Below are positions 1-33,016 of a stretch of DNA of 34,393 bases, piece after piece. The notes below the pieces were generated by a model. The model had not been told where the DNA came from, made no database searches, and was given only the letters and a program-made list of their open reading frames with translations. Position 1 is the stretch's first letter. Every line of letters starts with the position of its first letter. The position numbers were made by a program, and so were the translations under genes. Source of the DNA: Octopus bimaculoides (Eukaryota). The stretch spans positions 6,031,219-6,065,611 of the forward strand of contig NC_069007.1 in NCBI RefSeq assembly GCF_001194135.2, given 5' to 3'.

Positions 1-270
1 GGGCTCCAGGAAGGGATGGTGGCAAACCCTGCTGTACTCTTTCACCACAACTTTCTCTCACTCTTACTTCCTGCTTCTGTTGTGCCTGTAATTCAAAAGG
101 GTCAGCCTTGTCACACTGTGTCACGCTAAATATCCCCGAGAACTACGTTAAGGGTACACGTGTCTGTGGAGTGCTCAGCTGCTTGCACGTTAATTTCACA
201 AGCAGGCTGTTTCGTTGATCGGATCAACTGGAACCCTTGACATCGTAAGCGACGGAGTGCCAACAACAAT
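1..270 (+). mobile_element. SINE family E (tRNA-headed, AAC tail), 3' part; head lies outside the window
   Basis: Near-identical to 24230-24495 (+) and to the reverse complement of 9321-9600; ends in gccaacaacaat. Confidence 0.85.
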
Positions 271-571: not shown

Positions 572-1308
572 NNNNNNNNNNNNNNNNNNNNNNNNNNNNN
601 NNNNNNNNNNNNNNNNNNNNNNNNNNNNNNNNNNNNNNNNNNNNNNNNNNNNNNNNNNNNNNNNNNNNNNNNNNNNNNNNNNNNNNNNNNNNNNNNNNNN
701 NNNNNNNNNNNNNNNNNNNNNNNNNNNNNNNNNNNNNNNNNNNNNNNNNNNNNNNNNNNNNNNNNNNNNNNNNNNNNNNNNNNNNNNNNNNNNNNNNNNN
801 NNNNNNNNNNNNNNNNNNNNNNNNNNNNNNNNNNNNNNNNNNNNNNNNNNNNNNNNNNNNNNNNNNNNNNNNNNNNNNNNNNNNNNNNNNNNNNNNNNNN
901 NNNNNNNNNNNNNNNNNNNNNNNNNNNNNNNNNNNNNNNNNNNNNNNNNNNNNNNNNNNNNNNNNNNNNNNNNNNNNNNNNNNNNNNNNNNNNNNNNNNN
1001 NNNNNNNNNNNNNNNNNNNNNNNNNNNNNNNNNNNNNNNNNNNNNNNNNNNNNNNNNNNNNNNNNNNNNNNNNNNNNNNNNNNNNNNNNNNNNNNNNNNN
1101 NNNNNNNNNNNNNNNNNNNNNNNNNNNNNNNNNNNNNNNNNNNNNNNNNNNNNNNNNNNNNNNNNNNNNNNNNNNNNNNNNNNNNNNNNNNNNNNNNNNN
1201 NNNNNNNNNNNNNNNNNNNNNNNNNNNNNNNNNNNNNNNNNNNNNNNNNNNNNNNNNNNNNNNNNNNNNNNNNNNNNNNNNNNNNNNNNNNNNNNNNNNN
1301 NNNNNNNN

Positions 1309-1340
<32 letters not shown>

Positions 1341-5749: not shown

Positions 5750-6252
5750 CGTTTTGCATGTAGAGGTCTACACCTGAGAAAAAACTGCCCATTTAAGAAA
5801 GTGGGATGTTTCTGTTGTAAATAATTTTGACACGTAAAAGCGTACTGTAAAACCAGGATGACAAAACGTTGGAAGAAAGAAAAAAGAGTAAACAAGATGT
5901 TATCAAAAGAAAATGGCAAAGTGACAAAGAGGAAATTCGTAAATGTGAAAACTGAAAATATAAGGGTAAAAATGCATTTAGATACTGGAAGTGATATTAC
6001 CATTGTGAATGAAGAAACTTGGAGGTATATCGATAAGCCAAAATTATCTACAAAAGTAGCACACGGGATCATGGGTAAAAGATTATATTTTGTTAGTGAA
6101 TTTGTGTGTAATGCAACAATTTGGGATCAAATGAAAATGGCAAAAGTATATGTGCTGAAAAATACAAAAAGGGAGAAATATTGGACAGAAAGAAAAAAAA
6201 TGATAAAACAAATTTCGTTTCCTACGGAAATCGAAATCGCAAAAAGGGGAGA
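5750..6252 (+). pseudogene. Ty3/Gypsy (Mag-like) gag zinc knuckles and aspartic protease remnant, ending in a polypurine tract
   Basis: In frame with ORF 5858: RFACRGLHLRKNCPFKKVGCFCCK*F*HVKAYC (two decayed CCHC knuckles), then MHLDTGSDITIV (retropepsin DTG). PPT AAAAAGGGGAGA at 6241-6252 is followed by TGTTG. No RT/RNase H. Confidence 0.8.
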
Positions 6253-6310
6253 TGTTGTGGTGAGAGTCAGGACACCTCCTGCGATAAAAGACTTGACCGA
6301 ACAACTCTAA
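6253..6310 (+). mobile_element. Start of a Gypsy LTR (right boundary uncertain)
   Basis: TGTTGTGG directly after the PPT; weak similarity to the LTR start at 10522 (tgtt(g/a)tgg..agg(a)acacctc). Confidence 0.45.
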
Positions 6311-7292: not shown

Positions 7293-8460
7293 TTGAGGGA
7301 CGGTGGCGGAGCAATTTGCAGCGACAGTGGAGGCGATTGAAGAGTGTTTAAAAAGTATTAAAAAACTAACGACATTCATAACAAAAGGAAGGAAGTACGC
7401 CACCGTGCGCTTTGTGACAGAGGAGGAGGCAATTAAGCACTCCACGGAGGTAATACGATCGGAGGAGTGGATGTTTTTGCCATCGTACTGTGGCAAACAT
7501 GTGGCTAGAGTGCGAGTTGGCAAAGTACCCCCAGAACTGAAAGAAACATGGTTGATGACAGCCATAATGTTTAACATGAAGGAGGCCGAGATACTCTGAA
7601 GGCCACAAGGACACAAAAAATAAACTACTGGGGATACGAGATTGAGCTGACAGTCCAAGCAACAATAGAGGACTTAAACCGAATTGTCGAGGAGATAGTG
7701 CTGCCCGATGACTTGAGATTGAGAGTAGTGGTTGAAGGTAAGCCGCCTATATGTTTTACATGTGAGTGAAAAGGTCACATGAGGGCGAGGTTCCCACAGA
7801 GAGAATAGACGGAGAAGCAGGAGAGTACGGACCAGGTGGTACAGGTGGAGATGAAGGAAAAAACAACGAAGGAGGAATACACGGTGGTGAAAAAAAGAAA
7901 GAGAAGTGGAAGAGTGAGCCCTCCGCCAGAGAACCAGAAAAAGAAGTGGAAATGGAAGTTGTGACCAGAAGGAAGGAAGACAAAACGGTGGTGGAGAAAG
8001 AAAGTGAAAAAGTGTTCGAGAAGGAGTTACAGAAGGAGGAAACAGTGTTGAAGACGCCGGTTATTTTAACGGAAGAAAGAGATTCAAGAGTGCAACTGTA
8101 CGAGGGTGAAATAGAGAGATTGTTCAGAGTGGAGAAAGAAGAGGAAAAGGTACCGAAAGTGGAGCAGGAAAAGTGAAAACCAAGAGGAGGAAAAAAAATC
8201 GATGGAATTTCGTAACGTATGCGAAAAGCAAAGAAATGGAAAGGAAAATTTTTAAATTTAAGCATATCATAAGAGTGAAGTTACCCACGGATAATGTATT
8301 CTGAAAATGTGAAGGCCATCAGGGTCGACAAAGATATTTACAAGAGACTAAGAGACATGTGCGGAAGCGAGATTGACCCGCCTGGAGTGTTGGTGGAGTT
8401 CGACGATTTGCCACCAGTTATAGAGCTGAAAGACTTGGAGCCTTTCAAAGGGAAAAAAAA
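7293..8460 (+). pseudogene. L1/Tx1-like ORF1 copy A (RRM-like region, CCHC knuckle, charged region, C-terminal domain); frameshifted
   Basis: KYATVRFVTEEEAIKHS..ARVRVGKVPPELKETW; after a shift near 7595, LPDDLRLRVVVEGKPPICFTCE*KGHMRAR; C-terminal RLRDMCGSEIDPPGVLVEFDDLPPVIELKDL. Confidence 0.75.
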
Positions 8461-8499
8461 AAAAATTGTTTTGTTGAAAAGAAAAAGGGAAAAAAAAGT

Positions 8500-9830
8500 T
8501 CTGGTCCATATTCGCCTGCCAGACCTTCATAAAATAGCAGAGGAGCTGGTGCTTGCGGATGACACGAGACTGCGAATCGTTGTGGAGAGGAGACCTCCGG
8601 TATGCTACGCATGTGGAATAAGGGGACACATGAAAGCAAAGTGTCCCCTGAAAAGCGAGCGGGAGGAGGCGGAGAAGGAGAGTCGGGAAGAAGAGATTGC
8701 AACTGCAGAAGAGGAAATGGAGAAGTATACAGTAGTAGAAAGAAAAAGAAAGAACATGGAATCCCCACTTAAAAAGAAAAGAAAGGGATGGAAAAAGAAA
8801 AAAAAATGAGGAACCAACGGAAGAACGAACGCAAAGACCGGAGCCTTTAACTAGTAAGGAGGAAGAAAGACGGAAGAAGAGACTTAAAAGTGAGAAGGAG
8901 GAAGAAACAGAGACGAAAACCCGAGAAGAGCCACTGAAGGGGAAACACGAAAGAGTGATGGTTTGTTACAGAAAGAGTGCGGAAATAGAGAAGAGAATTT
9001 CCAAAATGAAAAGCATTTTAAGGATCAAACTGGCCGACAAGGAGGAGAACCAAAATGAGAAAGCGGAGTTGTTGGAGGATGATAGAGCAAGAAGGTTGAA
9101 AGAAATATTTGGAGACAGAATAGAGAATACAGCACCTCGATTTCGGTACGACAAGTTGCCATCGGTGGTGGCGTTCGAGGATTTAATGGATTTTATGGTG
9201 TGACATTGCGAACACGATGCAAACTGATAAATTATTACTTTATTTTAAAAAACAGTAAAATAGAATTACCTACGTTGGGGGTAGGAAAGCCATTCCTTTC
9301 TCATTACTTTCATATTCATATGTTGTTGTTGTTGGCACTCCGTCGCTTACGATGTCGAGGGTTCCAGTTGATCCGGTCAACGGAACAGCCTGCTCGTGAA
9401 ATTACCGTGCAAGTGGCTGAGCACTCCACAGACACGTGTACCCTTAACGTAGTTCTCGGGGATATTCAGCGTGACACAAAGTGTGACAAGGCTGACCCTT
9501 TGAATTACAGGCACAACCGAAACAGGAAGAAAGAGTGAGAGAAAGTTGTGGTGGAAGAGTACAGCAGAGTTTGCCACCATCCCCTGCCGGAGGGAGCCTC
9601 TTGGAGCTTTTAGGTGTTTTCGCTGAATAAACACTCACAATGCCTGGTCTGGGAATCGAAACCGCGATCCCATGACCGCGAGTCCGCTACCCTAACCACT
9701 GGGCCATTGTGCATCCACATTTTTCATATTCTTAATTCATTTGTTATATGTTTGCATGTACTCTATGTATTGTTTTGTCTGTCCTTTTGGTGTCCCCTCT
9801 TTATAATGGCCATGTACCCAAATAAAAGAA
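8500..9830 (+). mobile_element. L1/Tx1-like ORF1 copy B (5'-truncated) with 3' UTR and AATAAA, no ORF2; interrupted by a SINE
   Basis: LADDTRLRIVVERRPPVCYACGIRGHMKAKCP (intact CX2CX4HX4C). C-terminal segment 8955-9203 is homologous to that of copy A. After removing the SINE, about 220 bp of non-coding sequence lead to AATAAA at 9821-9826. Confidence 0.7.
9321..9720 (-). mobile_element. SINE family E, full length, with target-site duplication
   Basis: tRNA-like head (tggcccagtggttagg..ggtttcgattccc) and (AAC)n tail; TSD tttcatattc at 9308-9317 and 9722-9731. Confidence 0.88.
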
Positions 9831-10778: not shown

Positions 10779-11426
10779 CGAGGGAAAGTGAAAAATTATC
10801 CACACTTTCGCCATAGCATACCCTTATTATTGTCACACCCCTTTCTGCGCATGCATGTATATAATTGGTACTATTGTGGTTAGACGATCGAAGTTTGAGC
10901 CTGATCATGCCAGTTTAAGCATGACCACCCCACAAGCAATGGGCATGAAAGAAAAACAAAGAGCAGTGATCAGAGAGATGGTAATGGTGAACCAGTTCAC
11001 CATTGTCATCTCACATGCTTGCTGAATCTTCTTGTCAGTGGTCGAGGTTGACAAGCGTTTTGTTCCCTCTCCACGTGCCATGCTTGTCTGGCATCTTTTA
11101 AACTTCTCAATCCACTCATACACACTTCTATATGGTAGTGCACTGTCTCCATATTGTGCTAAAAGCCTCTGATGAATTTTAGCACCTGACACGCCTTCCA
11201 GCCTGAAAAATCGGATCACTGCTCTTTGTTCTTCTTTGGTGCTCTTTGCTGATGGAGCGGCCATGCTTACACTGGGAAACCAGAAAGAAGAAATGGCAAC
11301 GATCAGGTTCAGACTTCGGTCATATGACCACAACAGTACCAACTATAAGCATGCATGTGCAGAAAGCAGTGTGACAATAATAAAGATGTTATGGCGAAAG
11401 TGTAGATAATTTTTGACTTGCCTTCA
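10779..11426. mobile_element. Fold-back mariner derivative made of two convergent 5' ends
   Basis: TA-CGAGGGAAAGTGAAAAATTATCC at the left end and its diverged inverse at the right end. Minus arm: MAAPSAKSTKEEQRAVIRFFRLEGVSGAKIHQRLLAQYGDSALPYRSVYEWIEKFKRC (mariner HTH). Plus arm: MTTPQAMGMKEKQRAVI, then EMVMVN. Confidence 0.85.
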
Positions 11427-12708: not shown

Positions 12709-14065
12709 TCAGATGAAGAGAGAAGGGGAGTTGAGCCCATGTGGAGCAAAGGAGCGAAGAGAGAAGATTAATTCCTATTCACAGCAAAGGCGGGTATCCG
12801 GATGGCCCTTGTGCAAAGACAATTCGAACACAGGCAGGTGTTGTAGTAAATGACCGGTAGAGCGGAAATGGCACGAGACCAGGGTGTCGTTGCTGAGTCC
12901 GATGTGTCAGAGGTGCTCCATGAACTGGTCAGTCAAGCAGCCACCCATTTGACCGATGCACAGAAAAGGGTAGAAAGAGCAGGAGATGCAGTAAACGACG
13001 CTGCTAGAAGTACAGGTAAAGGAGTCAGTGATATAATAGGAACGATGATGGCTGCCTGTAAGGATGGTGGTGCTGTAAAGGTAGGGGCAAATGCGGCATC
13101 ATGGATGGAAGTAGGAGAACCAGCCAGGTTGGGGGGAGGGGTTAGGGTAGAAACTGTGGACCAGGAGGTCATGAAGGTTGTGGGCTCATTTGAAGGACGA
13201 AAGGGGTAAGTTAGAGAAGATGTGCGAGGTGGAGAGGTCAGATTGGGGACACCAGAAGGCTCAGAGAATGGTGCGTTGGAGGGGAACGGGTAGTAGGTGA
13301 GGAGAAACGGGAGACAAGCAACGGTGGGGCGAGTGCGGGGGAGAGAAAGTGGAGGGACAGTCCAATGAACGTGCTCTGGCAAGAGCTGTATGGATAATGG
13401 TGAGGGGATATCCACGAAAGATGAAGTGGCGAACCATGAGTTGAGACTGTCACAAAGTCATGGTTGCCATTGCAGATCCTGCGCAGATGGAGGAATTGGG
13501 AGTAGGAGATAGAAAGTTTGGTGTGGGTAGAGTGAGAGGAGAGGAAGTTAAGATATGAGTGTGAGTTGGTGTGTTTGTAGTGGATGGAGGTAGTGAGAGC
13601 AGAGTTGTGTATGTCGATCGAAATGTCAAGAAATGCGACAGAAGTGTTGGAAATAGTGCAGGAGAATTCGAGGGCAGGATAAAAGGATTGGACAAAAGTG
13701 AGGAAGGAGTCTAGTTGTTCGTGGGAGAGTGAGGTCACACCGATACAGTCATCAATATAATGACCATATATTTCGGGAGTGGGACCAGTGAATCGTGAGA
13801 AAATTTGGGCCTCAACGTAGCTAACAAACAGGTTCGCACACTTGGGGCCCATTCTCATTCCCATTCCCGAGGTTTGCTGGTAAAACTCCCCCATGAACGA
13901 CAAGCAGTTGAGGGAGAGAACAAGTTCGACCAGGCGAAGAAATGTGGAGGTGTCAGGTTGGGGGTTGAGTTGAAGGTGTAGGAAGTGTGTGAGTGCAAGA
14001 AGTCCTTCATTGTGTAGGATCGCTGACTGGAAATAGACTATTGATATCAAGAGTGAAGAGTAGTT
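12709..14065 (-). pseudogene. Penelope-like retroelement (Neptune-type): RT, Cys linker and GIY-YIG endonuclease; decayed
   Basis: LFTLDINS..GMGMRMGPKCANLFVSYVE..YIDDCIG..VAFLDISI..YSQFLHLRRIC (PLE RT). A downstream frame reads HP*CRICPYL..FTCTSSSVVYCISC..LCIGQMG..FMEHL*..HFRSTGH..ELIFSLRSFAPHGLN and ends at TGA 12709-12711. Frameshifts and stops are present. Confidence 0.9.
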
Positions 14066-14342: not shown

Positions 14343-15645
14343 TTAATTCTGTACATCACACCTAACACTCTATACACACACACACACACANNNNNNNNNN
14401 NNNNNNNNNNNNNNNNNNNNNNNNNNNNNNNNNNNNNNNNNNNNNNNNNNNNNNNNNNNNNNNNNNNNNNNNNNNNNNNNNNNNNNNNNNNNNNNNNNNN
14501 NNNNNNNNNNNNNNNNNNNNNNNNNNNNNNNNNNNNNNNNNNNNNNNNNNNNNNNNNNNNNNNNNNNNNNNNNNNNNTGGCTATGGCTGCCCTCATTGAA
14601 ACTTTTCTGTAATAGAATCATAAAGAAAATCATGTCCAAGAAGAATCTGATTTCTAAAAGTAGAGACAGCGATAGAGAGAGAGAAAAAAAAAAGCCAAGA
14701 TTATTTTGAGAACCTAGGTTCCAATCATGAGGTAATTGACTCAATTATGCTTCTGCACATATGAAGAATTCAAGAATTTGGCTCACAAAAGATGCAAAAC
14801 ATTGATTTCTTGTGATTCCACATGAAATTTACTCAGAATGGCTAAAGTCAGATCCATAAGATAATTTATTTGGGCAAATTCTTCAGATTAAATAACTAAA
14901 TTTAATTGAAGAGATTTCATCTTAATTTCTGAAGAACAATTAGTGAAGAGAAGGATGGTGCAATCTATAGTTCTATTTTTTGGGTGATTCCTCAGCAATC
15001 TTTGCAATTATATTTAGCGCCATTATTTCTTTACCATTCTAATTGCATTTTAACAGTGAGAAGTAGAAAGAAAATAACAAACAACAATACAACTCCTTTT
15101 GTATTGTATGTTTCTTTGGAACTAAATTCTCTGCATCCATTAATTTTCTTCTTAGAAAAGAATTTTCTGTCATTGGGAAGCAATTAAGAGCAATTTCTTA
15201 TTTCTAATATATATTTTTATATTGATTTATTTTTATTCTTATTTTAGTTTCCTCATAAACTATTGTCTCTGGCTTTAATATCTCCATATATTGTAAGCAG
15301 ATGTTTGTTGTTTATGTTTTTCACTTTAATCTTTCAAGTGGTCATTACTACATTTGTCTATGATGAGTCAATGAAAGGGAGAGCATCGACGTGGTCGTTC
15401 GATGTGCTAGAAACAGAAGCCAAAAACCTTACTAGTTTAAAAAGAAATGAAAAAAATATTAACAATCAATACTGAAATGCTTTGATCAAAACTTTGTGTG
15501 ATGTGAGCTAACCTAAGGGATAAACAACCATAACAACACCAACAACAACATTTTGTTTAATAAACTAATGGGATAGCATCTACCTGGTTACTCAGTCTGC
15601 TAGAAATAATAACTCAGAAGCTTATCATCATCATTATTTAACATA

Positions 15646-16070
15646 TAGGCGTAGAAGTGGCTGTGTAGTAAGTAGCTTGCTTTCCAACCACATGGTTCCG
15701 GGTTCATTCCCACTGCGTGGCATCTTGGGCAAGAGTCTTCTACTATAGCCTCGGGCCAACCAAACCCTTGTGAGTGGATTTGGTAGACGGAAACTGAAAG
15801 AAGCCCGTCGTATATATGTATATATATATATATGTATGTATGTATGTGTGTGTATATGTTTGTGCGTCTGTGTTTGTCCTCCCAACATCTCTTGACAACT
15901 CATGCTGGTGCGTTTACGTCCCCGTAACTTAGCGGTTTGGCAAAAGAGACCAATAGAATAAGTACTAGGCTTCCAAAGAATAAGTCCTGGGGTCGATTTG
16001 CTCAACTAAAGGCGGTGCTCCAGCATGGCGACAGTCAAATGACTGAAATAAGTAAAAGTGTAAAAGAGTA
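15646..16070 (+). mobile_element. SINE family A, full length (tRNA head, CORE-like segment, internal microsatellite, taaaagag tail)
   Basis: gtggctgtgtagtaag..gggttcattccc; tggcatcttgggcaag; 3' cagcatggcgacagtcaaatgactgaaataagtaaaag; at least 7 related copies in the window. Confidence 0.88.
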
Positions 16071-17873: not shown

Positions 17874-17999
17874 NNNNNNNNNNNNNNNNNNNNNNNNNNN
17901 NNNNNNNNNNNNNNNNNNNNNNNNNNNNNNNNNNNNNNNNNNNNNNNNNNNNNNNNNNNNNNNNNNNNNNNNNNNNNNNNNNNNNNNNNNNNNNNNNNN

Positions 18000-18258
18000 G
18001 GTTTTCGAGCGAGATCGTTGCCAGTGCCCCTGGACTGGCTCTTGTGCGGGTGGCACATAAAAGACACCATTTCGAGCGTGGCCGTTTTCGTGTGGGTGAC
18101 ACGTAAAAGCACCCACTACACTCTCTGAGTGGTTGGTGTTAGGAAGGGCATCCAGCTGTAGAAACTCTGCCAAATCAGATTGGAGCCTGATGTTGCCATC
18201 CGGTTGCACCAGTCCTCAGTCAAAGCGGACGTTAAACGATGATGATGATGATGATGAT
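18000..18258 (+). mobile_element. Repeat family F (SINE-like, GAT tail)
   Basis: ttaggaagggcatccagctgtagaaactctgcc..gcggacgttaaacgatgatgat; multiple copies in the window. Confidence 0.85.
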
Positions 18259-18513
18259 ATACATGCATATATATATATATGCGTGTGTGAGTTTTTAGTT
18301 ATAAAAACTTCTTTACTTTAGTGATTATAGATAATGATGTCAACACTTTTTTAAACATCACGAAGCTGTGTAATTAATCAAAACTGTGCAACAATTCATT
18401 TAAAAGTTCCGTATTGATCACCCATTAATTACATTTACAATTCTTATTTTATTTTCCTAAATTTGACTACAGCACATCACTATTGTTTAGAATAATTAAA
18501 CAAAATTAATATT

Positions 18514-19000: not shown

Positions 19001-20005
19001 AACCGCTATCTTATTAATGAGAAATTAATTTTAATGAATTCTTTGCGTTAATAGTTTCTAGAGTAATGGTATGCAAATAATAGGTGTATAATTACTGATT
19101 TCTCTTCTCTTTTTTTTTGTTATTATTATTATTATTCAGGGTTGATAAATTAAGTACCAGTGTTTCACTGGGGCCAATGTAATCCCCTTTCCCCAAATTT
19201 CAGGCCTGCTGCCTATAGTAGAAAGGATTATCATTATTATTATAAGCATTTTGCTCAGCCTCCCCTATGATTCTGCCAGCCTTAGTAATAATTATAAGAT
19301 GAAGCACAATCAGAAACAGCTGTTAGCTAATGAAACTGATTATATAATTCCTTCTCCTTTGCCATTCAATTATGTATATACACATACATATATACACACA
19401 CGTGTATATATATATATATATATATATNNNNNNNNNNNNNNNNNNNNNNNNNNNNNNNNNNNNNNNNNNNNNNNNNNNNNNNNNNNNNNNNNNNNNNNNN
19501 NNNNNNNNNNNNNNNNNNNNNNNNNNNNNNNNNNNNNNNNNNNNNNNNNNNNNNNNNNNNNNNNNNNNNNNNNNNNNNNNNNNNNNNNNNNNNNNNNNNN
19601 NNNNNNNNNNNNNNNNNNNNNNNNNNNNNNNNNNNNNNNNNNNNNNNNNNNNNNNNNNNNNNNNNNNNNNNNNNNNNNNNNNNNNNNNNNNNNNNNNNNN
19701 NNNNNNNNNNNNNNNNNNNNNNNNNNNNNNNNNNNNNNNNNNNNNNNNNNNNNNNNNNNNNNNNNNNNNNNNNNNNNNNNNNNNNNNNNNNNNNNNNNNN
19801 NNNNNNNNNNNNNNNNNNNNNNNNNNNNNNNNNNNNNNNNNNNNNNNNNNNNNNNNNNNNNNNNNNNNNNNNNNNNNNNNNNNNNNNNNNNNNNNNNNNN
19901 NNNNNNNNNNNNNNNNNNNNNNNNNNNNNNNNNNNNNNNNNNNNNNNNNNNNNNNNNNNNNNNNNNNNNNNNNNNNNNNNNNNNNNNNNNNNNNNNNNNN
20001 NNNNN

Positions 20006-20219
20006 AGCGTGGCCGTTTTCGTGCGGGTGACACGTAAAAGCACCCACTACACTCTCTGAGTGGTTGGCGTTAGGAAGGGCATCCAGCTGTAGAAACTCTG
20101 CCAAATTAGACTGGAGCCTGGTGTTGCCATCCGGTTTCACCAGTCCTCAGTCAAATCGTCCAACCCATGCTAGCATGGAAAGCGGACGTTAAACGATGAT
20201 GATGATGATGATGATGATG
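20006..20219 (+). mobile_element. Repeat family F
   Basis: Same conserved body and (GAT)n tail; a degenerate copy follows at about 20320-20490. Confidence 0.85.
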
Positions 20220-20841: not shown

Positions 20842-21235
20842 TAGGCGGTGGCTGTGTGGTAAGTAGCTTGCTTACCAACCACATGGTACCGGGTTCAGTT
20901 CCACTGCGTGGTATCTTGGGCAAGTGTCTTCTACTATAGCCTTGGGTCGACCAAAGCCTTGTGAGTGGATTTGGTAGACGGAAACTGAAAGAAGCCCATC
21001 GTATACATGTAAATATATGTATGTGTGTGTGTGTGTGTGTTTATGTGTTTGGGTGTCTGTGTTTGTCCCCCCAATATCGCTTTACAACTGATGCTGGTGT
21101 GTTTACGTCCCCGTAACTTAGCGGTTCGGCAGAAGAGAATGATAGAATAAGTACTAGGCTTCCAAAGAATAAGTCCTGGAGTTGATTTGCTTCACTAAAG
21201 ACGGTGCTCCAGCATGGCCACAGTCAAATGACTAT
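20842..21235 (+). mobile_element. SINE family A, near full length
   Basis: Collinear with 15646-16070. Confidence 0.88.
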
Positions 21236-21474
21236 AACGATGATGATAGTGATGATATCAATGATGGTGTTGAGGATGATGATAACGATGATTATGATGG
21301 TGGTAATGATGATGATGATGATACTGATGATGATGGTGGTGGTGGTAGTGGTGGTGATGATGATGATCATCATAACAAGAATGACAAAACTGATGACAAC
21401 AATGACAACAGTTGATGATAATAATGATGAGAGGCAACAACGATGACAGCAACAATAACGGTGATGACGATGAC

Positions 21475-21506
<32 letters not shown>

Positions 21507-21695
21507 CAGCAACGACGATGATGGTGAAGATGATGATGATAACAATGATGATCATGATGAGGATGATGATGATAATGCTGATGGTAATGATGACAATGAT
21601 GACAAAAGTCAAGATCTGCTGCTACTCTTGCTGCTGCTGCTGCTGATGATGATGATACTAATGGCAACAATAGGATAATGATGATGATGATGATT
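21236..21695. repeat. Degenerate (GAT)n-based triplet array
   Basis: Mixed GAT/GAC/AAT/GGT/AAC/CTG triplets over about 460 bp. Confidence 0.9.
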
Positions 21696-22372: not shown

Positions 22373-22431
<59 letters not shown>

Positions 22432-23404
22432 NNNNNNNNNNNNNNNNNNNNNNNNNNNNNNNNNNNNNNNNNNNNNNNNNNNNNNNNNNNNNNNNNNNNN
22501 NNNNNNNNNNNNNNNNNNNNNNNNNNNNNNNNNNNNNNNNNNNNNNNNNNNNNNNNNNNNNNNNNNNNNNNNNNNNNNNNNNNNNNNNNNNNNNNNNNNN
22601 NNNNNNNNNNNNNNNNNNNNNNNNNNNNNNNNNNNNNNNNNNNNNNNNNNNNNNNNNNNNNNNNNNNNNNNNNNNNNNNNNNNNNNNNNNNNNNNNNNNN
22701 NNNNNNNNNNNNNNNNNNNNNNNNNNNNNNNNNNNNNNNNNNNNNNNNNNNNNNNNNNNNNNNNNNNNNNNNNNNNNNNNNNNNNNNNNNNNNNNNNNNN
22801 NNNNNNNNNNNNNNNNNNNNNNNNNNNNNNNNNNNNNNNNNNNNNNNNNNNNNNNNNNNNNNNNNNNNNNNNNNNNNNNNNNNNNNNNNNNNNNNNNNNN
22901 NNNNNNNNNNNNNNNNNNNNNNNNNNNNNNNNNNNNNNNNNNNNNNNNNNNNNNNNNNNNNNNNNNNNNNNNNNNNNNNNNNNNNNNNNNNNNNNNNNNN
23001 NNNNNNNNNNNNNNNNNNNNNNNNNNNNNNNNNNNNNNNNNNNNNNNNNNNNNNNNNNNNNNNNNNNNNNNNNNNNNNNNNNNNNNNNNNNNNNNNNNNN
23101 NNNNNNNNNNNNNNNNNNNNNNNNNNNNNNNNNNNNNNNNNNNNNNNNNNNNNNNNNNNNNNNNNNNNNNNNNNNNNNNNNNNNNNNNNNNNNNNNNNNN
23201 NNNNNNNNNNNNNNNNNNNNNNNNNNNNNNNNNNNNNNNNNNNNNNNNNNNNNNNNNNNNNNNNNNNNNNNNNNNNNNNNNNNNNNNNNNNNNNNNNNNN
23301 NNNNNNNNNNNNNNNNNNNNNNNNNNNNNNNNNNNNNNNNNNNNNNNNNNNNNNNNNNNNNNNNNNNTAAATATATGTGTGTATATATATATATATATAC
23401 ATAC

Positions 23405-23552
23405 GCTAGGAAGGGCATCCAGCTGTAGAAACTCTGCCAAATCAAATTGGAGCCTGGTATAGCTATCTGGTTTCACCAGTCCTCAGTCAAATCGTCCAAC
23501 CCATGCTAGCATGGAAAGCGGACGTTAAACGATGACGACAATGATGATGATG
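23405..23552 (+). mobile_element. Repeat family F, 3' part
   Basis: Conserved body and tail. Confidence 0.82.
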
Positions 23553-24111: not shown

Positions 24112-24495
24112 GTGGAGGCGCAATGAACCGGTGGTTAGGGCAGCGGACTCACGGTCATAGGATCGCAGTTTCGATTCCCAGACCGGGCGTTGTGAGTGTT
24201 TATTGAGCGAAAACACTTAAAGCTCCACGAGGCTCCGACAGGGGATGGTGGCGAATCCTGCTATACTCTTCCACCACAACTTTCTCTCACTCTTACTTCC
24301 TGTTTCTGTTGTACCTGTAATTCAAAAGGGTCAGCCTTGTCACACTGTGTCACGCTGAATATCTCCGAGAACTATGTTAAGGGTACACGTGTCTGTGGAG
24401 TGCTCAGCCGCTTGCACATTAATTTCATGAACAGGCTGTTCTGTTGATCGGATCAACTGGAACCCTCGACATCATAAGCGACGGAGTGCCAACAA
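24112..24495 (+). mobile_element. SINE family E, full length, with TSD
   Basis: tRNA-like head (ccggtggttagggc..gtttcgattccc); TSD cat(t/c)gcaatgt at 24101-24111 and 24496-24506. Confidence 0.88.
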
Positions 24496-24681
24496 CATCG
24501 CAATGTTGACAATATTGTTGTGTCATCTTATGACTAAAGACATGCAGAAAATGATAGCTTCCAAATCCTGTTTTCTGACTAAATAAAATTTATCAAACTT
24601 TAAACCTCAGTGACATGAAAAAAAATTCTGCTGCAAGTGAATTAGGCCCTGAGATTTGACATGAAAATTTACATGAACACA

Positions 24682-24938
24682 CATCATCATCATCATCGTT
24701 TAATGTCCGCTTTCCATTCTAGCATGGGTTGGACGATTTGACTGAGGATGGTGAACCAGGTGGCTACACCAGGCTCCAATCTGATTTGGCAGAGTTTCTA
24801 CAGTTGGATGCCCTTCCTAATGCCAACCACTCCAAGAGTGTAGTGGGTGCTTTTACATGCCACCTGCACGAAGGCCAGTCAGGCGGTACTGGCAACGGCC
24901 ACACTCGAAATGGTGTCTTTTACGTGCCACCTGCACAG
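24682..24938 (-). mobile_element. Repeat family F
   Basis: Reverse complement of family F. Confidence 0.85.
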
Positions 24939-25018
24939 GAGCAAAATTTGAAAATTTTGAAATTTACAAAAAAAATTTACATGAGCACACAAAATTTAAA
25001 AATTTTGAAATTTCAAAA

Positions 25019-25658: not shown

Positions 25659-25994
25659 TATATNNNNNNNNNNNNNNNNNNNNNNNNNNNNNNNNNNNNN
25701 NNNNNNNNNNNNNNNNNNNNNNNNNNNNNNNNNNNNNNNNNNNNNNNNNNNNNNNNNNNNNNNNNNNNNNNNNNNNNNNNNNNNNNNNNNNNNNNNNNNN
25801 NNAAGGAAGAAGAATATATATACATATATATATATATATATTTATATAAGGAGAAAAAGAAGAAGAATATATGTACACATATATATATATATATTGCTCA
25901 ATCTAGAAAACAAAACCAACAAAGTCTCCTTTTATTTCTTCATGATGGTGTTATAGGAACACAAATCAATATTTCAGCTATATACATACATACA

Positions 25995-27489: not shown

Positions 27490-27871
27490 TTTGGTGAGCA
27501 GATCTGTTATTCTAAAATCGGAATAGCACCTGTGCCCAGAGTCGCCTTTCTGGCACTTGTACCCGTGACATGTGTAAGGATTTTCGAGTGAGATCGTTGC
27601 CAGTGCCCCTGGACTGGCTCTTGTGCAGGTGGCACATAGAATACACCATTTTGAGTGTGGCCATTGCCAGTACCCCCTGATTGGCCTTCGTGCTGGTGGC
27701 ACATAAAAGCACCCACTACACTCTCTGAGTGGTTGGCGTTAGGAAGGGCATCCAGCTGTAGAAACTCTGCCAAATCAGATTGGAGCCTGGTGTAGCCATC
27801 TGGTTTCACCAGTCCTCAGTCAAATCGTCCAACCCATGCTAGCATGGAAAGCGGATGTTAAACGATGATGA
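27490..27871 (+). mobile_element. Repeat family F, longest copy, with an internal approximately 66-bp subrepeat
   Basis: ttgccagt(g/a)cccc..ggtggcacata occurs twice; abuts the mariner fragment at 27872. Confidence 0.85.
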
Positions 27872-28450
27872 AAGAATTTCCTGTTTTTATTAGCAAAAAA
27901 CTCATCCAAGTGAATTTTTACATCCTCTTCAAAGTTGAAAGTCTGTTCATTCAAAGAATTTTGAAGAGACTGAAACAGGTGGACATCTGAAGGTGTAAAG
28001 TCAGCCAAATATGGAGGGTACAGCATTCCAGCCATAACTTCTGACTTATCTGCCAAAAGTGTGTGGTATGACATTGTCATCATGAGAGAAAATACCTTTA
28101 CAATTGGCAAGTGCTGACCCCTTCTGGAGAAGCACTGCATTTAATTTGTCCGCTAATCACAGTACATATCCGAATTGAGGGTGCTGTCCATGGAAAGAAA
28201 CTCACAAAAGACAACACCCAACTGATCCCACCAAATTAAAAGCATAACCCTCTTTGGCTAAAGACCTGCTTTGGAAGTTGCTTGGGATTGTTTACCACAC
28301 TTCCCCAATAATAGGTTGTGCTTCACATTGTTATAGACAATCCATTTTTCATCTATGTTACCATTTTCTTCAAGAAACATCATTTTCTTCATGTTCCTAC
28401 AACAAATCTCAGAAGGACACGTAAAGGTAAAGTTACTTTCTTCAGTTATA
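27872..28450 (-). pseudogene. Mariner DD34D catalytic-domain remnant
   Basis: IDEKWIVYNNVK..KAGL*PKRVMLLIWWD..LNSDMYC..SHDDNVIPH..YPPYLADFTPSDVHLFQSLQNSL; multiple stops and frameshifts. Confidence 0.88.
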
Positions 28451-29812: not shown

Positions 29813-30221
29813 TCTCTTTTTACTCTTTTACTTGTTTCAGTCATTTGACTGTGGCCATGCTGGAGCACCGTCTTTAGTCGAGCAAATCGACCCCGGGACT
29901 TATTCTTTGTAAGCCTAGTACTTATTCTATCGATCTGTTTTGCCGAACTGCTAAGTCACAGGGACATAAACACACCAGCATCAGTTATCAAGCAATGCTA
30001 GGGGGACAAACACAGACACACAATCACACATATATATATATATATATATACATACATACGACGGGCTTCTTTCAGTTTCCGTCTACCAAATCCACACACA
30101 AAGCTTTGGTCAGCCCGAAGCTATAGTAGAAGACACTTGCCCAAGGTGCCATGCAGTGGGACTGAACCCAGAACCATGTGGTTGGTAAGCAAGCTACTTA
30201 CCACACAGCCACTCCTGTGCC
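29813..30221 (-). mobile_element. SINE family A, full length
   Basis: Reverse complement is collinear with 15646-16070. Confidence 0.88.
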
Positions 30222-30534
30222 TGGTTCTGTATTAATTAAAAAGAAAAATCAACAATTTTCCATTATTTCAGAACAAACTCATTTGCAATGTGGTCTCTGC
30301 GTTTCAACAAAGATATCAGAAAAAAGTAAATAACAGCATAATGGAAAGTTCCAGAATTTTACTGTCTACGAGTTGGAAGAACTGCAGTTTATCTGGAGCT
30401 GATCTTAACTATTAAACAGCTTTTCGCAGAGAATAGTCTTTCATTCAAAAGTCTATTGAGACTACAACTATCGACATCATTATTGTGTTATTGGCTTAGT
30501 GGTTAGCATGCTGGACTCATGATCATAAGATCTC

Positions 30535-31697: not shown

Positions 31698-31821
31698 CAG
31701 CTGATAGAAGAAAGTTGTGCCTACTCTTGCAGTACTTTCTGTACAACTTTCATGTGTGCATACATACACTTGTATGCATATATACACACATTTTTTTTCT
31801 CCTTGTTTTTCTCCTTATTCT

Positions 31822-31942
31822 CTCTGTTGAAGAGCGTAGCTTGAAACGTTAAAGACTTTCTCTATTCCCGAGCGTTAAACTAATACATCCTTTTGTTGTT
31901 TACACCACCTGTCCTCGTCTGTTGTTGTTTTTTTTCGTAAAT

Positions 31943-31945
<3 letters not shown>
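31822..31945 (+). repeat. Penelope-associated repeat with a degenerate hammerhead-like core
   Basis: CTGTTGA-A-GAGC-gta-GCTT-GAAAC at 31824-31847; the rest matches 1672-1812 inverted. Confidence 0.5.
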
Positions 31946-32008
<63 letters not shown>

Positions 32009-32009
32009 A

Positions 32010-32690
32010 TATATAAAATTTATTAATGAGGGTAGAAATTGATATTAATCAATTAAAACCAGTGGTCTAGCATATTAGAAAAATCCGAAGATTAAAATTA
32101 TATTACATACAAAAATAAGAGGAATGACCAGCAAATGTGGACTCCTATATGCTAGAAATAGATGCCGAATCATCTAACCACGAAAAAAATATGTTCTCAG
32201 TAAAAAATTTAGTGACACAACAGACTGTAAAAGGGCAAGACAAATGAAAAAATACTAAATTAAAAAACGATTAACCTACATACCATGGTTTCACCTGTTA
32301 AAATTTACATAAGTAAATACCTGCAGGCTCGTCAGCGTAGTCTGTTAATTTGAGATATAATTCCCAGAACTAGACACAAGACGTCCATCCGTAAGGGAGC
32401 ACGTGTTGAGTTCTACAAATTACATTCAGTGTATCCTTTCAAATATCCTCAATCTGGCACACTAAGTCCGGAAATAGTTCTGCAGTTAATAAATTTTTGC
32501 AGCTAATTTACCGGTTTGAGAACATCATTATATAAAATTTATTAATGAGGGTAGAAATTGATATTAATCAATTAAAACCAGTGGTCTTGGTCATTCCTCT
32601 TATTTTTGTATGTAATATAATTTTAATCTTCGGATTTTTTTAATATGCTAGACCACTGGTTTTAAATTGATTAATATCAATTTCTACCCT
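32010..32690 (-). mobile_element. Non-coding hammerhead-bearing retroelement (Penelope-derived / retrozyme-like)
   Basis: Perfect 59-bp direct repeat 32010-32068 = 32529-32587 (period 519); 32588-32690 is an inverted copy of 32029-32130 with 2 differences; internal hammerhead; minus-strand AATAAA at 32019-32024; no ORF. Confidence 0.68.
32271..32348 (-). ncRNA. Type I hammerhead ribozyme, all core nucleotides present, GUA cleavage site
   Basis: Minus strand: UUAAC-aga-CUACG / CUGACGA / GCCUG..AUUUAC-uuau-GUAAAU..CAGGU / GAAA / C-CAUG-G / UA / UGUAG-GUUAA. Stems I, II and III all pair. Confidence 0.82.
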
Positions 32691-32691
32691 T

Positions 32692-32880
32692 GAAGGATTT
32701 TAGTTAAATGAATCAACCCCAATAGCATTTTACCTTTTTAAATGTCTGGTACTTATTTAATCAGAATCTTTTGCTGAAACACTATGTTATGGGGATGTCA
32801 ACACACCAACACAATTTGTCAAGCAATGACGGGGAACAAAAACAGACACAAAGACACACACACAGATATACATATAGACA
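32692..32880 (-). mobile_element. SINE family A, degenerate 3' half
   Basis: Matches 29870-30030. Confidence 0.6.
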
Positions 32881-33016
32881 TAAATATATAGAAATAATTA
32901 AGATTCAGTTGAATAAGGTAGCTAAGTTGAGGTACCAAGACACTCCATTATTATCCACACAGCTTGAAGTAAGGTGAATAAAAAGCAAATAAGTAACAAA
33001 GATGTCACGATATTAA

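What the first reader, a model, noticed from the sequence alone, without database searches (positions are those of the whole stretch)
32271..32348. Apparently intact type I hammerhead ribozyme with two palindromic dimerisation motifs
Seen in sequence (minus strand): full core CUGACGA..GAAA..GUA. Stem I is 5 bp + AGA bulge + 5 bp. Stem II is GCCUG/CAGGU, enclosing a 6-bp hairpin. Stem III is only A-U and C-G, capped by the palindromic tetraloop CAUG (ACCAUGGU overall). Predicted cut: between 32281 and 32280. Established knowledge: a minimal stem III with a palindromic tetraloop is typical of hammerheads from Penelope-like elements and animal retrozymes, which can cleave as dimers. Stem II also starts with a second 8-nt palindrome, CCUGCAGG, and CAGGU is repeated on both sides of a 21-nt insert. 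Inference: this allows an alternative short stem II or a second intermolecular contact.
Basis: partly seen in the sequence, partly recalled or inferred. Interest (0 to 1): 0.82.

Follow-up and report, generated by a model that had tools for sequence, protein, structure and literature searches.

The report
Lone hammerhead ribozyme in a retroelement
The sequence holds a genuine-looking type I hammerhead ribozyme motif, but it is a single, slightly flawed copy inside a small non-coding retroelement insertion, which is a known and common situation in invertebrate genomes.

Summary
The motif is exactly where and as described, on the minus strand at 32348..32271. It has the core CUGACGA/GAAA/GUA, stem I of 5+5(6) bp with an AGA bulge, a 5-bp stem II, and stem III of 2 bp plus CAUG. 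A chance match is very unlikely (about 1e-4 per window).

"Intact" overstates it:
- The closing pair of stem II is G.U rather than the conserved G10.1-C11.1.
- Loop 2 is 26 nt long.
- No Rfam hammerhead model matches even at E<=10, whereas a coral-type control scores 27 bits.
- Thermodynamic folding prefers a slipped stem I that buries the cleavage site.

The motif sits in sense orientation in a 519-nt non-coding, AT-rich unit (32528..32010). A 59-nt partial tandem copy and a head-to-head inverted 103-nt copy of the unit's 3' end precede it. The insertion abuts a (TC)n(TA)n microsatellite. This matches the architecture published for Penelope-like elements and non-LTR retrozymes. There is only one ribozyme, so this locus cannot release a unit-length or circular RNA.

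An unrelated hammerhead family in coral-like metagenome contigs has the identical stem III (ACCAUGGU). The second palindrome is a by-product of the repeated CAGGU.

Verdict: a new member of a known kind, of modest interest. No other genomic copies could be obtained, so covariation is untested.

The parts
32271..32348 (-). Type I hammerhead motif, 78 nt. Outer stem I 32348-32344/32275-32271. AGA bulge 32343-32341. Inner stem I 32340-32336/32280-32276. Core CUGACGA 32335-32329. Stem II 32328-32324/32297-32293, with a G.U at its base. 26-nt loop 2 32323-32298. GAA 32292-32290. Helix III plus loop ACCAUGGU 32289-32282. A17 at 32281.
   Evidence: Read directly. Only descriptor hit in the window. 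Top hit of my covariance model R1, full length, 14.6 bits, E about 0.04.
32280..32281 (-). Predicted self-cleavage site, after A17 of GUA, between 32281 and 32280.
   Evidence: Follows from hammerhead numbering applied to the sequence. Cleavage itself is not tested.
32298..32323 (-). Unusually long loop 2: CAGGU plus 21 nt containing the hairpin AUUUAC-UUAU-GUAAAU. The CAGGU duplicates the 3' strand of stem II and creates the palindrome CCUGCAGG.
   Evidence: The stem-loop II segment alone folds at -9.8 kcal/mol. The long stem II has probability 0.95 and the short alternative 0.0.
32010..32528 (-). 519-nt non-coding unit that carries the hammerhead in sense orientation. GC is 33%. As a circle it is predicted to be strongly self-paired.
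   Evidence: Spacing of the exact 59-nt direct repeat is 519. No ORF longer than 36 aa. GC. Circular MFE -128.5 kcal/mol, z = -5.2, against 12 control segments with mean z -0.4 and minimum -3.7.
32529..32587 (-). Partial upstream tandem copy: the last 59 nt of the unit, 100% identical to 32010-32068.
32588..32690 (+). Inverted 5'-truncated copy: 103 nt of the unit's 3' part, lacking the terminal 19 nt. It lies head-to-head with the main copy and is 98% identical to 32029-32130 in reverse complement (one substitution, one 1-nt indel).
   Evidence: Together with 32548-32587 it forms the hairpin that gave the below-threshold MIR5070 match.
32019..32024 (-). AAUAAA hexamer 9 nt before the 3' end of the unit. 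It is a possible polyadenylation signal, though it is weak evidence in AT-rich DNA.
   Evidence: Sequence read.
31948..32005 (.). (TC)14(TA)15 microsatellite directly beyond the 3' end of the unit; the likely insertion target.
   Evidence: Penelope-like elements show an insertion bias for microsatellites (PMC8557442).

Best explanation
The site is a solitary ('monomer') insertion of a small non-coding retroelement that carries a type I hammerhead ribozyme. This is the kind of element called a non-LTR retrozyme, or non-autonomous Penelope-like-element derivative, in animals.

Inferred life cycle of the family:
1. Tandem copies are transcribed.
2. Hammerheads with a weak 2-bp helix III pair through the palindrome ACCAUGGU, or fold alone, and cut after GUA.
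3. The unit-length RNA is ligated into a highly self-paired circle.
4. The circle or linear RNA is copied back into DNA by the reverse transcriptase/endonuclease of an autonomous Penelope-like element at microsatellite targets.
5. This leaves slightly more than one unit plus an inverted truncated copy.

At this locus:
- There are 1.11 units (578 nt) plus a 103-nt inverted copy, and only one ribozyme.
- At most, a read-through transcript could be cut once, between 32281 and 32280. No unit-length or circular RNA can be released.
- This copy also has a G.U at 10.1-11.1, plausibly a C-to-T change at a CpG. It has a 26-nt loop 2 and a competing slipped stem I. I therefore expect weak or no cleavage as a monomer, and cleavage only if a second copy supplies the extended helix III.

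Shown: the motif, its statistical unlikelihood, the repeat architecture, the non-coding nature and the predicted self-pairing.
Inferred: retrotransposition origin, family membership and activity.
For: - Complete core and three helices at the stated coordinates.
- Chance expectation about 1e-4 per window; 0 hits in 211 Mb of simulated sequence.
- Helix III plus loop 3 (GAAACCAUGGU) is identical to that of a real type I hammerhead family found in 25 metagenome contigs. That family's fold holds in 88% of cells against 22-46% when slid, with a compensatory U-A to C-G change.
- A covariance model built from that family places its best window hit exactly on 32271-32348(-), full length.
- Architecture: an exact 59-nt direct repeat spaced 519 nt apart, plus a head-to-head inverted 103-nt copy of the 3' part lacking the 19-nt tail, next to (TC)n(TA)n. 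This matches published Penelope-like insertions: partial tandems, an inverted 5'-truncated copy next to the upstream repeat, a short tail at one end only, and a microsatellite bias (PMC8557442).
- The unit is non-coding, has 33% GC and is 519 nt long. This is within the 51-972 bp range reported for retrozyme consensus lengths, and solitary monomers are described as common (bioRxiv 10.64898/2026.07.22.740005).
- The predicted circle is unusually self-paired: z = -5.2 against a control mean of -0.4. Retrozyme circles are described as highly self-paired (PMC7229834).
- The hammerhead and the AAUAAA hexamer are on the same strand.
- The window shows CpG depletion (o/e 0.57). In the coral-type family 2 of 19 copies carry the same U11.1 variant, which supports the CpG-decay reading.
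Against: - No second copy of the unit or of the hammerhead could be found. There is none in the window, none with the family-specific pattern in metagenomes, and no real hammerhead among the 4 matches in viral contigs. The claim that this is a repeat family is therefore untested.
- No Rfam hammerhead hit even at E<=10.
- My own model's score is marginal: 14.6 bits, with a junk hit at 14.1.
- No clear target-site duplication.
- No reverse-transcriptase or endonuclease remnants adjoin the element.
- The tandem junction (32529/32528) does not coincide with the ribozyme cut site.
- 103-nt inverted arms could also be read as the terminal inverted repeats of a DNA transposon.
- The assembly is a draft with 2,723 N, so the exact 59-nt repeat could be an assembly artefact.
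Confidence: 0.62

Rival explanations
1. The element 32029-32690 is a foldback/MITE-type DNA transposon with 103-bp terminal inverted repeats, and the hammerhead-like motif inside it is a chance or captured sequence without ribozyme ancestry.
For: Inverted arms 32029-32130 and 32588-32690 are 98% complementary. The right-hand hairpin resembles MITE-derived miRNA precursors (MIR5070, 54.9 bits, below the gathering score of 100). No Rfam hammerhead match.
Against: The chance expectation for the motif is about 1e-4 per window. The exact 59-nt direct repeat includes 19 nt outside the inverted repeat, which a cut-and-paste element does not explain. No target-site duplication flanks the arms. Helix III and loop 3 are identical to a genuine hammerhead family.
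Confidence: 0.12
2. This is an active retrozyme source locus. The hammerhead is fully functional, and the locus produces self-cleaved and circularised 519-nt RNA.
For: Complete core. Strongly self-paired predicted circle. The repeats are nearly identical (0/59 and 2/103 differences), so the insertion is young.
Against: There is only one hammerhead per 1.11 units, so only one cut is possible. G.U at 10.1-11.1. The inner stem I is predicted at <1%, against about 54% in consensus coral-type copies. Monomer copies are regarded as dead-end offspring (bioRxiv 10.64898/2026.07.22.740005).
Confidence: 0.06
3. This is a host-domesticated hammerhead, like the intronic HH9/HH10 of amniotes, that regulates a host transcript by site-specific cleavage.
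For: None specific. Such domesticated type I hammerheads exist (Rfam families HH9 and HH10; one search shows the HH9 model).
Against: The surroundings are repeats and microsatellites with no recognisable host gene. The motif sits inside a young insertion with its own repeats. No orthologous sequences could be obtained to test conservation.
Confidence: 0.03
4. The repeat architecture (the exact 59-nt repeat and the inverted copy) is an assembly artefact of a draft genome. The hammerhead motif is real but its context is misread.
For: The window has several N runs next to microsatellites, 2,723 N in all. The direct repeat is 100% identical.
Against: The inverted copy differs from its partner by one substitution and one indel, as expected for two real copies rather than one collapsed or duplicated read. 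There is no N run within 31800-33000.
Confidence: 0.08

Closest known systems
Metazoan non-LTR retrozymes (type I hammerhead repeats of corals, mussels, salamanders; PMC7229834; bioRxiv 10.64898/2026.07.22.740005)
   Same: Canonical-style type I hammerhead with a 2-bp helix III and a palindromic tetraloop. Non-coding, low-GC unit of a few hundred nt. Predicted highly self-paired circle. Solitary monomer copies are known.
   Different: No tandem array here: 1.11 units and one ribozyme. The unit (519 nt) is longer than the 170-400 nt of the 2020 description. Loop 2 is 26 nt. 10.1-11.1 is G.U. The loop 1/loop 2 tertiary-contact nucleotides are not recognisable. The cleavage triplet is GUA rather than GUC.
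Hammerheads of Penelope-like elements and their insertion architecture (PMC4209133, PMC8557442)
   Same: Partial tandem plus an inverted 5'-truncated copy next to the upstream repeat. A short tail at one end only. A microsatellite target. The ribozyme is in sense orientation in the 3' part. A long helix II and a 5-bp helix I resemble the 'min-HHR' description.
   Different: No RT/GIY-YIG ORF is attached. The duplicated part (59 nt) does not contain the ribozyme. A helix III is present, and there is no extra nucleotide between A9 and 10.1, unlike the minimal PLE variants.
Coral-type dispersed hammerhead family found here in metagenome contigs (L010, L027, L064 and others)
   Same: Identical GAAACCAUGGU (helix III plus loop 3). 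The same layout: outer stem I of 5 bp, loop 1, inner stem I of 5 bp, and stem II of 5 bp. Solitary copies in non-coding dispersed repeats with variable 5' truncation. A minority of copies has U11.1.
   Different: No sequence similarity outside the core. Loop 2 is 7 nt there and 26 nt here. The triplet is GUC there and GUA here. Loop 1 there carries the canonical AAUAC/UGAA nucleotides. The Rfam HH9 model recognises that family (27.4 bits) but not the candidate.
Newt satellite 2 / avocado sunblotch viroid 'double hammerheads' (Forster et al. 1988, cited in PMC4209133 and PMC6155905)
   Same: A weak helix III with a palindromic loop, so that two copies can form an extended helix III. Here that would be 8 bp at -11.2 kcal/mol. 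The duplex would also remove G16.2-U16.1-A17 from the competing slipped fold.
   Different: Those systems have two ribozymes in one multimeric transcript. This locus has one.

Membership tests
Hammerhead ribozyme, type I | Invariant core: C3 U4 G5 A6 N7 G8 A9, G12 A13 A14, A15.1-U16.1, H17 | tested here: met
   CUGACGA ... GAA A..U A, read directly. Only such site in the window with helices.
Hammerhead ribozyme, type I | Three helices around the core, with helix I open and helices II and III closed by loops | tested here: met
   Stem I is 5 + 5(6) bp, stem II is 5 bp, stem III is 2 bp. Stem II and the outer stem I have probability >0.9 in the ensemble.
Hammerhead ribozyme, type I | Highly conserved G10.1-C11.1 pair (PMC4209133) | tested here: not met
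   G10.1.U11.1 wobble (32328/32293). The same variant occurs in 2 of 19 coral-type copies. It is plausibly CpG decay (CpG o/e 0.57), which is an inference.
Hammerhead ribozyme, type I | Match to curated covariance models (Rfam Hammerhead_1, HH9, HH10 and others) | tested here: not met
   No hit at the gathering score or at E<=10. The positive control L010 gives HH9 27.4 bits in E-value mode but nothing at gathering, so the negative result is only moderately informative. My own model R1 gives 14.6 bits, E about 0.04.
Hammerhead ribozyme, type I | Loop 1 / loop 2 tertiary contact nucleotides | tested here: inconclusive
   The AGA bulge and the 26-nt loop 2 do not resemble the canonical UAC-type loop 1 seen in HH9 and the coral family. 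Mussel retrozyme hammerheads also lack these nucleotides yet cleave at about 0.1 per min (PMC7229834).
Hammerhead ribozyme, type I | Mg2+-dependent self-cleavage after H17 | not testable with these tools
   Needs in vitro transcription. In silico, the active inner stem I has probability <0.01, and the active fold is -12.3 against an MFE of -18.2 kcal/mol.
Hammerhead ribozyme, type I | Compensatory covariation in stems among homologous copies | not testable with these tools
   No homologous copy could be obtained. The available collections do not hold the source genome.
Non-LTR retrozyme (animal) | Tandem repeats, each unit with a type I hammerhead | tested here: not met
   1.11 units and one hammerhead. 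This fits only the 'monomer derivative' class of bioRxiv 10.64898/2026.07.22.740005.
Non-LTR retrozyme (animal) | Short, non-coding, low-GC unit (<45% GC) lacking LTR, PBS and PPT | tested here: met
   519 nt, 33% GC, no ORF longer than 36 aa.
Non-LTR retrozyme (animal) | Unit RNA forms a highly self-paired circle | tested here: met
   In silico only: circular MFE -128.5, z = -5.2, against controls with mean z -0.4 and minimum -3.7.
Non-LTR retrozyme (animal) | Expression as linear and circular RNA | not testable with these tools
   No transcriptome data are available.
Non-LTR retrozyme (animal) | Co-existence with autonomous Penelope-like elements in the genome | tested here: inconclusive
   An RT relic lies at 13235-14047(-): weak RVT_1, 56% identity to P0001. 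It is followed by a GIY-YIG-looking motif seen by eye only, which Pfam and a homology search did not confirm.
Penelope-like element (autonomous) | ORF with RT and GIY-YIG endonuclease between pseudo-LTRs that carry the hammerhead | tested here: not met
   No RT or EN similarity anywhere near 30-34.4 kb. No ORF of 90 aa or more there.
Penelope-like element (insertion architecture) | Partial tandem, inverted 5'-truncated copy at the upstream end, tail at one end, microsatellite target (PMC8557442) | tested here: met
   A 59-nt exact direct repeat, a 103-nt head-to-head inverted copy lacking the 19-nt tail, and an adjacent (TC)n(TA)n.
MITE / foldback DNA transposon | Terminal inverted repeats flanked by a target-site duplication | tested here: not met
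   Inverted arms are present, but no duplication flanks them. The left flank is ...TTAATG and the right flank is TGAAGG.... The direct repeat extends 19 nt beyond the arm.

The most novel reading that the evidence does not exclude
The unit could represent an undescribed retrozyme family, in what looks to me (from memory of its SINEs only) like a cephalopod genome. Its hammerhead would have a long interrupted helix II and two self-complementary segments (ACCAUGGU and GCCUGCAGGU). It would be locked in a slipped inactive fold as a monomer and switch on only in a two-contact dimer. The attached 103-bp inverted copy would make transcripts partly double-stranded, and so possible substrates for RNA editing or small-RNA pathways.
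Probability: 0.07. Interest if true: 0.55.

Novelty: new member of a known kind. Interest (0 to 1): 0.27.

Why it matters
Hammerhead-bearing retroelements are abundant in invertebrates, so one more copy changes little. It would matter modestly as a first pointer to retrozyme-type elements in this lineage. I found no paper linking hammerhead ribozymes to cephalopods, and the only octopus mention concerns Naiad elements that lack hammerheads (PMC8557442). It would also matter as a natural example where a slipped stem I and a weak palindromic helix III could act as a monomer-off/dimer-on switch. A practical point: Rfam's gathering scores missed the candidate, and also missed the six clearly genuine coral-type hammerhead loci tested here. 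Descriptor searches therefore remain necessary for this class.

Tried and rejected
- Rfam at the gathering score and at E<=10, on the whole window and on 171 nt: no hammerhead hit. The many miRNA 'hits' are microsatellite artefacts.
- Looked for other copies in the window by blastn with word size 7 and by a core scan: none.
- Looked for the same locus or paralogues through exact ORF products (36, 130 and 32 aa): none on record. The collections evidently do not hold this genome's non-genic ORFs.
- Viral contigs scan: 4 matches, all without helices, so chance.
- Metagenome scan with a family-specific pattern: 0 hits.
- The broader metagenome pattern found an unrelated coral-type family, not homologues.
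- Asked whether that coral family sits next to Penelope ORFs: no ORFs found in L052 or L022.
- Tried to use the head-to-head arrangement in L018 and L075 as independent support. Both share the same junctions, so it is probably a subfamily feature and not independent evidence.
- Tried to confirm a GIY-YIG endonuclease in the RT relic at about 12.8-13.0 kb: no Pfam hit and no homologues.
- Nested-structure evaluation of the double hammerhead is impossible, because helix III in trans crosses stem I. Only duplex energies are given.
- Organism not identified. The only RT homologue comes from an unnamed ENA metagenome scaffold.

Full report
**Observation.** The minus strand from 32348 to 32271 reads UUAAC AGA CUACG CUGACGA GCCUG CAGGU AUUUACUUAUGUAAAUUUUAA CAGGU GAA AC CAUG GU A UGUAG GUUAA. 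In hammerhead numbering this gives:
- C3-A9 = CUGACGA, G12-A14 = GAA, A15.1-U16.1, C15.2-G16.2, loop 3 = CAUG, and H17 = A at 32281.
- Stem I is 5 bp, an AGA bulge, then 5 bp (6 bp with 32349/32270).
- Stem II is GCCUG/CAGGU around a 26-nt loop that contains a 6-bp hairpin.
- Both palindromes (ACCAUGGU, CCUGCAGG) and the repeated CAGGU are present.

**Chance.**
- A descriptor requiring the core, stem I >=5, stem II >=5, stem III >=2 and a short loop 3 finds only this site in the window.
- It found none in 211 Mb of Markov sequence with the window's composition.
- A looser version gave 0.023 hits per window.
- My analytic estimate is about 1.6e-9 per strand-base, or about 1e-4 per window before the outer stem I is counted.

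The motif is therefore very unlikely to be a chance match in a randomly chosen window. A handful of chance matches per gigabase-sized genome would still be expected.

**Curated and custom models.**
- Rfam gives no hammerhead hit at the gathering score, at E<=10 over the window, or on 171 nt around the site.
- As a control I used a hammerhead family recovered from metagenome contigs (see "Relatives" below). It is also missed at gathering but scores 27.4 bits against HH9 in E-value mode.
- The candidate is thus at least about 14 bits less model-like. The likely causes are its 26-nt loop 2, U11.1, unrelated stems and GUA.
- A covariance model I built from that family (R1) puts its best window hit exactly on 32271-32348(-), end to end. 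The score is only 14.6 bits (E about 0.04, rough), and a junk hairpin scores 14.1.

**Predicted folding.**
- Stem II (P about 0.95) and the outer stem I (P about 0.9) are stable.
- The inner stem I needed for catalysis has P<0.01. ACUAC prefers to pair one register over with G16.2-U16.1-A17 and U-G, and U4-G5 pairs with loop 3.
- The active fold is -12.3 kcal/mol against an MFE of -18.2 kcal/mol.
- Consensus copies of the control family show the inner stem I at about 0.54.
- Nearest-neighbour models ignore the core's tertiary contacts, so this is a caution and not proof of inactivity.
- An intermolecular ACCAUGGU duplex (8 bp, -11.2 kcal/mol) would remove exactly the nucleotides used by the slipped fold. 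A monomer-off/dimer-on switch is therefore mechanistically plausible, as described for newt and viroid hammerheads (PMC4209133, PMC6155905, PMC7229834).
- The proposed short stem II (GCC-UGCA-GGU) is worth -0.7 kcal/mol, has P = 0.0, and would leave 26 nt inside the core.
- The GCCUGCAGGU self-duplex (-18.3 kcal/mol) would abolish stem II. I regard the second palindrome as a by-product of the CAGGU repeat and not as a designed contact.

**Context.** The motif is embedded in a structured insertion.
- 32010-32068 is repeated exactly at 32529-32587, a spacing of 519 nt.
- 32029-32130 and 32588-32690 are inverted copies, 103 nt long, differing by one substitution and one indel.

Read on the minus strand, from upstream to downstream:
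1. An inverted 5'-truncated copy of the unit's 3' part, lacking the last 19 nt.
2. The last 59 nt of a preceding unit.
3. One complete 519-nt unit carrying the hammerhead in sense. The cut site is about 270 nt from the 3' end.
4. An AAUAAA hexamer 9 nt from the end.
5. The (TA)15(TC)14 microsatellite.

The unit has no ORF longer than 36 aa and 33% GC. As a circle it is predicted to be unusually self-paired: z = -5.2, against 12 control segments with mean -0.4 and minimum -3.7.

This combination is what Craig et al. describe for Penelope-like insertions: partial tandems, an inverted 5'-truncated copy beside the upstream repeat, a short tail at one end, and a microsatellite bias (PMC8557442). 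The unit itself fits the animal non-LTR retrozymes. These are now argued to be non-autonomous Penelope derivatives with consensus lengths of 51-972 bp and frequent solitary monomers (PMC7229834; bioRxiv 10.64898/2026.07.22.740005).

A rolling or template-switching reverse transcription of a 519-nt RNA would naturally give 1.11 units. No RT or endonuclease remnants adjoin the element, and I see no target-site duplication.

**Relatives.**
- No homologue of the unit could be obtained: none in the window, none through exact-ORF look-ups, no real hammerhead among the viral-contig matches, and none with a family-specific metagenome pattern.
- A broader pattern (CTGANGAG...GAAACCATGGTH) returned 120 metagenome loci. 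Of these, 25 form a genuine type I hammerhead family...GGCAA CUGAUGAG AUCC...GGAUC GAAACCAUGGUC UUGCC....
- Its fold is supported: 88% of cells are paired, against 22-46% when partners are slid. There is one compensatory U-A to C-G pair in stem II.
- It has the same helix III and loop 3 and the same outer/inner stem I layout as the candidate.
- It occurs as solitary copies in a non-coding dispersed repeat with variable 5' truncation and a common 3' end.
- Two of 19 copies carry U11.1.
- Together with the window's CpG depletion (o/e 0.57), this makes a C-to-T change in the CpG formed by C11.1 and G12 a reasonable origin for the candidate's G.U. This is an inference.
- Two loci (L018, L075) show a head-to-head inverted arrangement, but they share junctions. 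It is probably a subfamily trait and not independent support.

**Mechanism and verdict.** The most likely reading (about 0.6) is a young, solitary copy of a hammerhead-bearing non-autonomous retroelement.
- The family would propagate through transcription of tandem copies, ribozyme self-cleavage (probably helped by dimerisation through helix III), circularisation, and reverse transcription by a Penelope-like element's enzymes.
- This particular copy has one ribozyme, a wobble at 10.1-11.1, an oversized loop 2 and a competing fold. It is probably a dead-end that at best cuts a read-through transcript once.
- The main rival is a foldback DNA transposon with a chance motif (about 0.12). The direct repeat extending beyond the arms, the missing target-site duplication and the motif statistics all argue against it.
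- An active circRNA-producing locus, a domesticated host ribozyme and an assembly artefact are each unlikely (<=0.08).

**Novelty and interest.** Type I hammerheads with minimal palindromic helix III in retrozymes and Penelope-like elements are well documented, so this is a new member of a known kind. I found no literature linking hammerheads with cephalopods. From memory, the window's SINEs look octopus-like, but the organism was not verified. The motif is real but ordinary in kind, imperfect in detail, and solitary.

Noticed in passing
window 12778-14047 (-): Decayed reverse-transcriptase fragment. It gives a weak RVT_1 match and has 56-61% identity to P0001, which carries PF26215 HTH_animal. 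After frameshifts it is followed by a peptide that looks by eye like a GIY-YIG endonuclease motif (VVYCISC..LCIGQM..EHL). This may be a Penelope-like element relic. Pfam and a homology search did not confirm the endonuclease part. No hammerhead core lies downstream of it.
   Followed up: partly
window 5858-6310 (+) and 8294-8809 (+): ORFs with a retroviral-protease-like DTGSD motif (seen by eye) and a gag-like CCHC zinc knuckle (Pfam zf-CCHC, E 1.7e-4). They lie in a purine-skewed 5-14 kb stretch and are probably remnants of an LTR-type retrotransposon.
   Followed up: partly
window 10905-11342 (-) and 27820-28140 (-): Mariner/Mos1-type transposase pieces. The first has an HTH_48 domain (Pfam E 3.9e-7). 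The second is a C-terminal-looking fragment, judged by eye only.
   Followed up: partly
window 18087-18271, 20018-20202, 23354-23538, 27687-27871, 24754-24942 (inverted); also 15622-16065, 20848-21238, 29818-30247: Two families of short interspersed repeats (71-96% identical copies), often ending in (GAT)n or (TA)n runs. From memory they resemble octopus SINEs. The organism was not verified.
   Followed up: no
window 572-1337, 14400-14600, 17880-18000, 19405-20005, 22396-23403, 25660-25800 (approximate): Runs of N (2,723 in all), each next to a microsatellite. The window comes from a gapped draft assembly, so exact repeat structures deserve confirmation with long reads.
   Followed up: no
window 32547-32691 (-): Below-threshold match to the plant miRNA family MIR5070 (54.9 bits against a gathering score of 100). 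It is explained by the hairpin formed by the partial tandem copy plus the inverted copy of the hammerhead element, and is not a miRNA gene. The many mir-297, mir-3149 and mir-466 matches elsewhere are (TA)n/(TG)n microsatellites.
   Followed up: yes
L010, L014, L017, L018, L021, L022, L027, L030, L039, L044, L047, L051, L052, L054, L064, L071, L074, L075, L078, L090, L095, L099, L117, L119, L120 (metagenome contigs): A genuine type I hammerhead family (CUGAUGAG-AUCC..GGAUC-GAAACCAUGGUC) in a dispersed non-coding repeat of at least 700 nt. The copies are solitary, with variable 5' truncation and a common 3' end. Rfam gathering thresholds missed all six loci tested (L010, L014, L030, L044, L117, L120); HH9 scores only 27.4 bits against a gathering score of 52. 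A subfamily (L044, L099, L117) has a compensatory change in stem II.
   Followed up: partly
whole window: CpG is depleted (observed/expected 0.57) and TpG+CpA is enriched (1.29). This is consistent with methylation-driven CpG decay in this genome.
   Followed up: partly
window 21218-21620: Long imperfect (GAT)n/(GGT)n trinucleotide array. It creates spurious His-, Asp- and Ser-rich ORFs on both strands.
   Followed up: no
window 2-268 and 24231-24497: A 267-nt direct repeat pair, 92% identical and 24 kb apart. It is an unidentified interspersed repeat.
   Followed up: no
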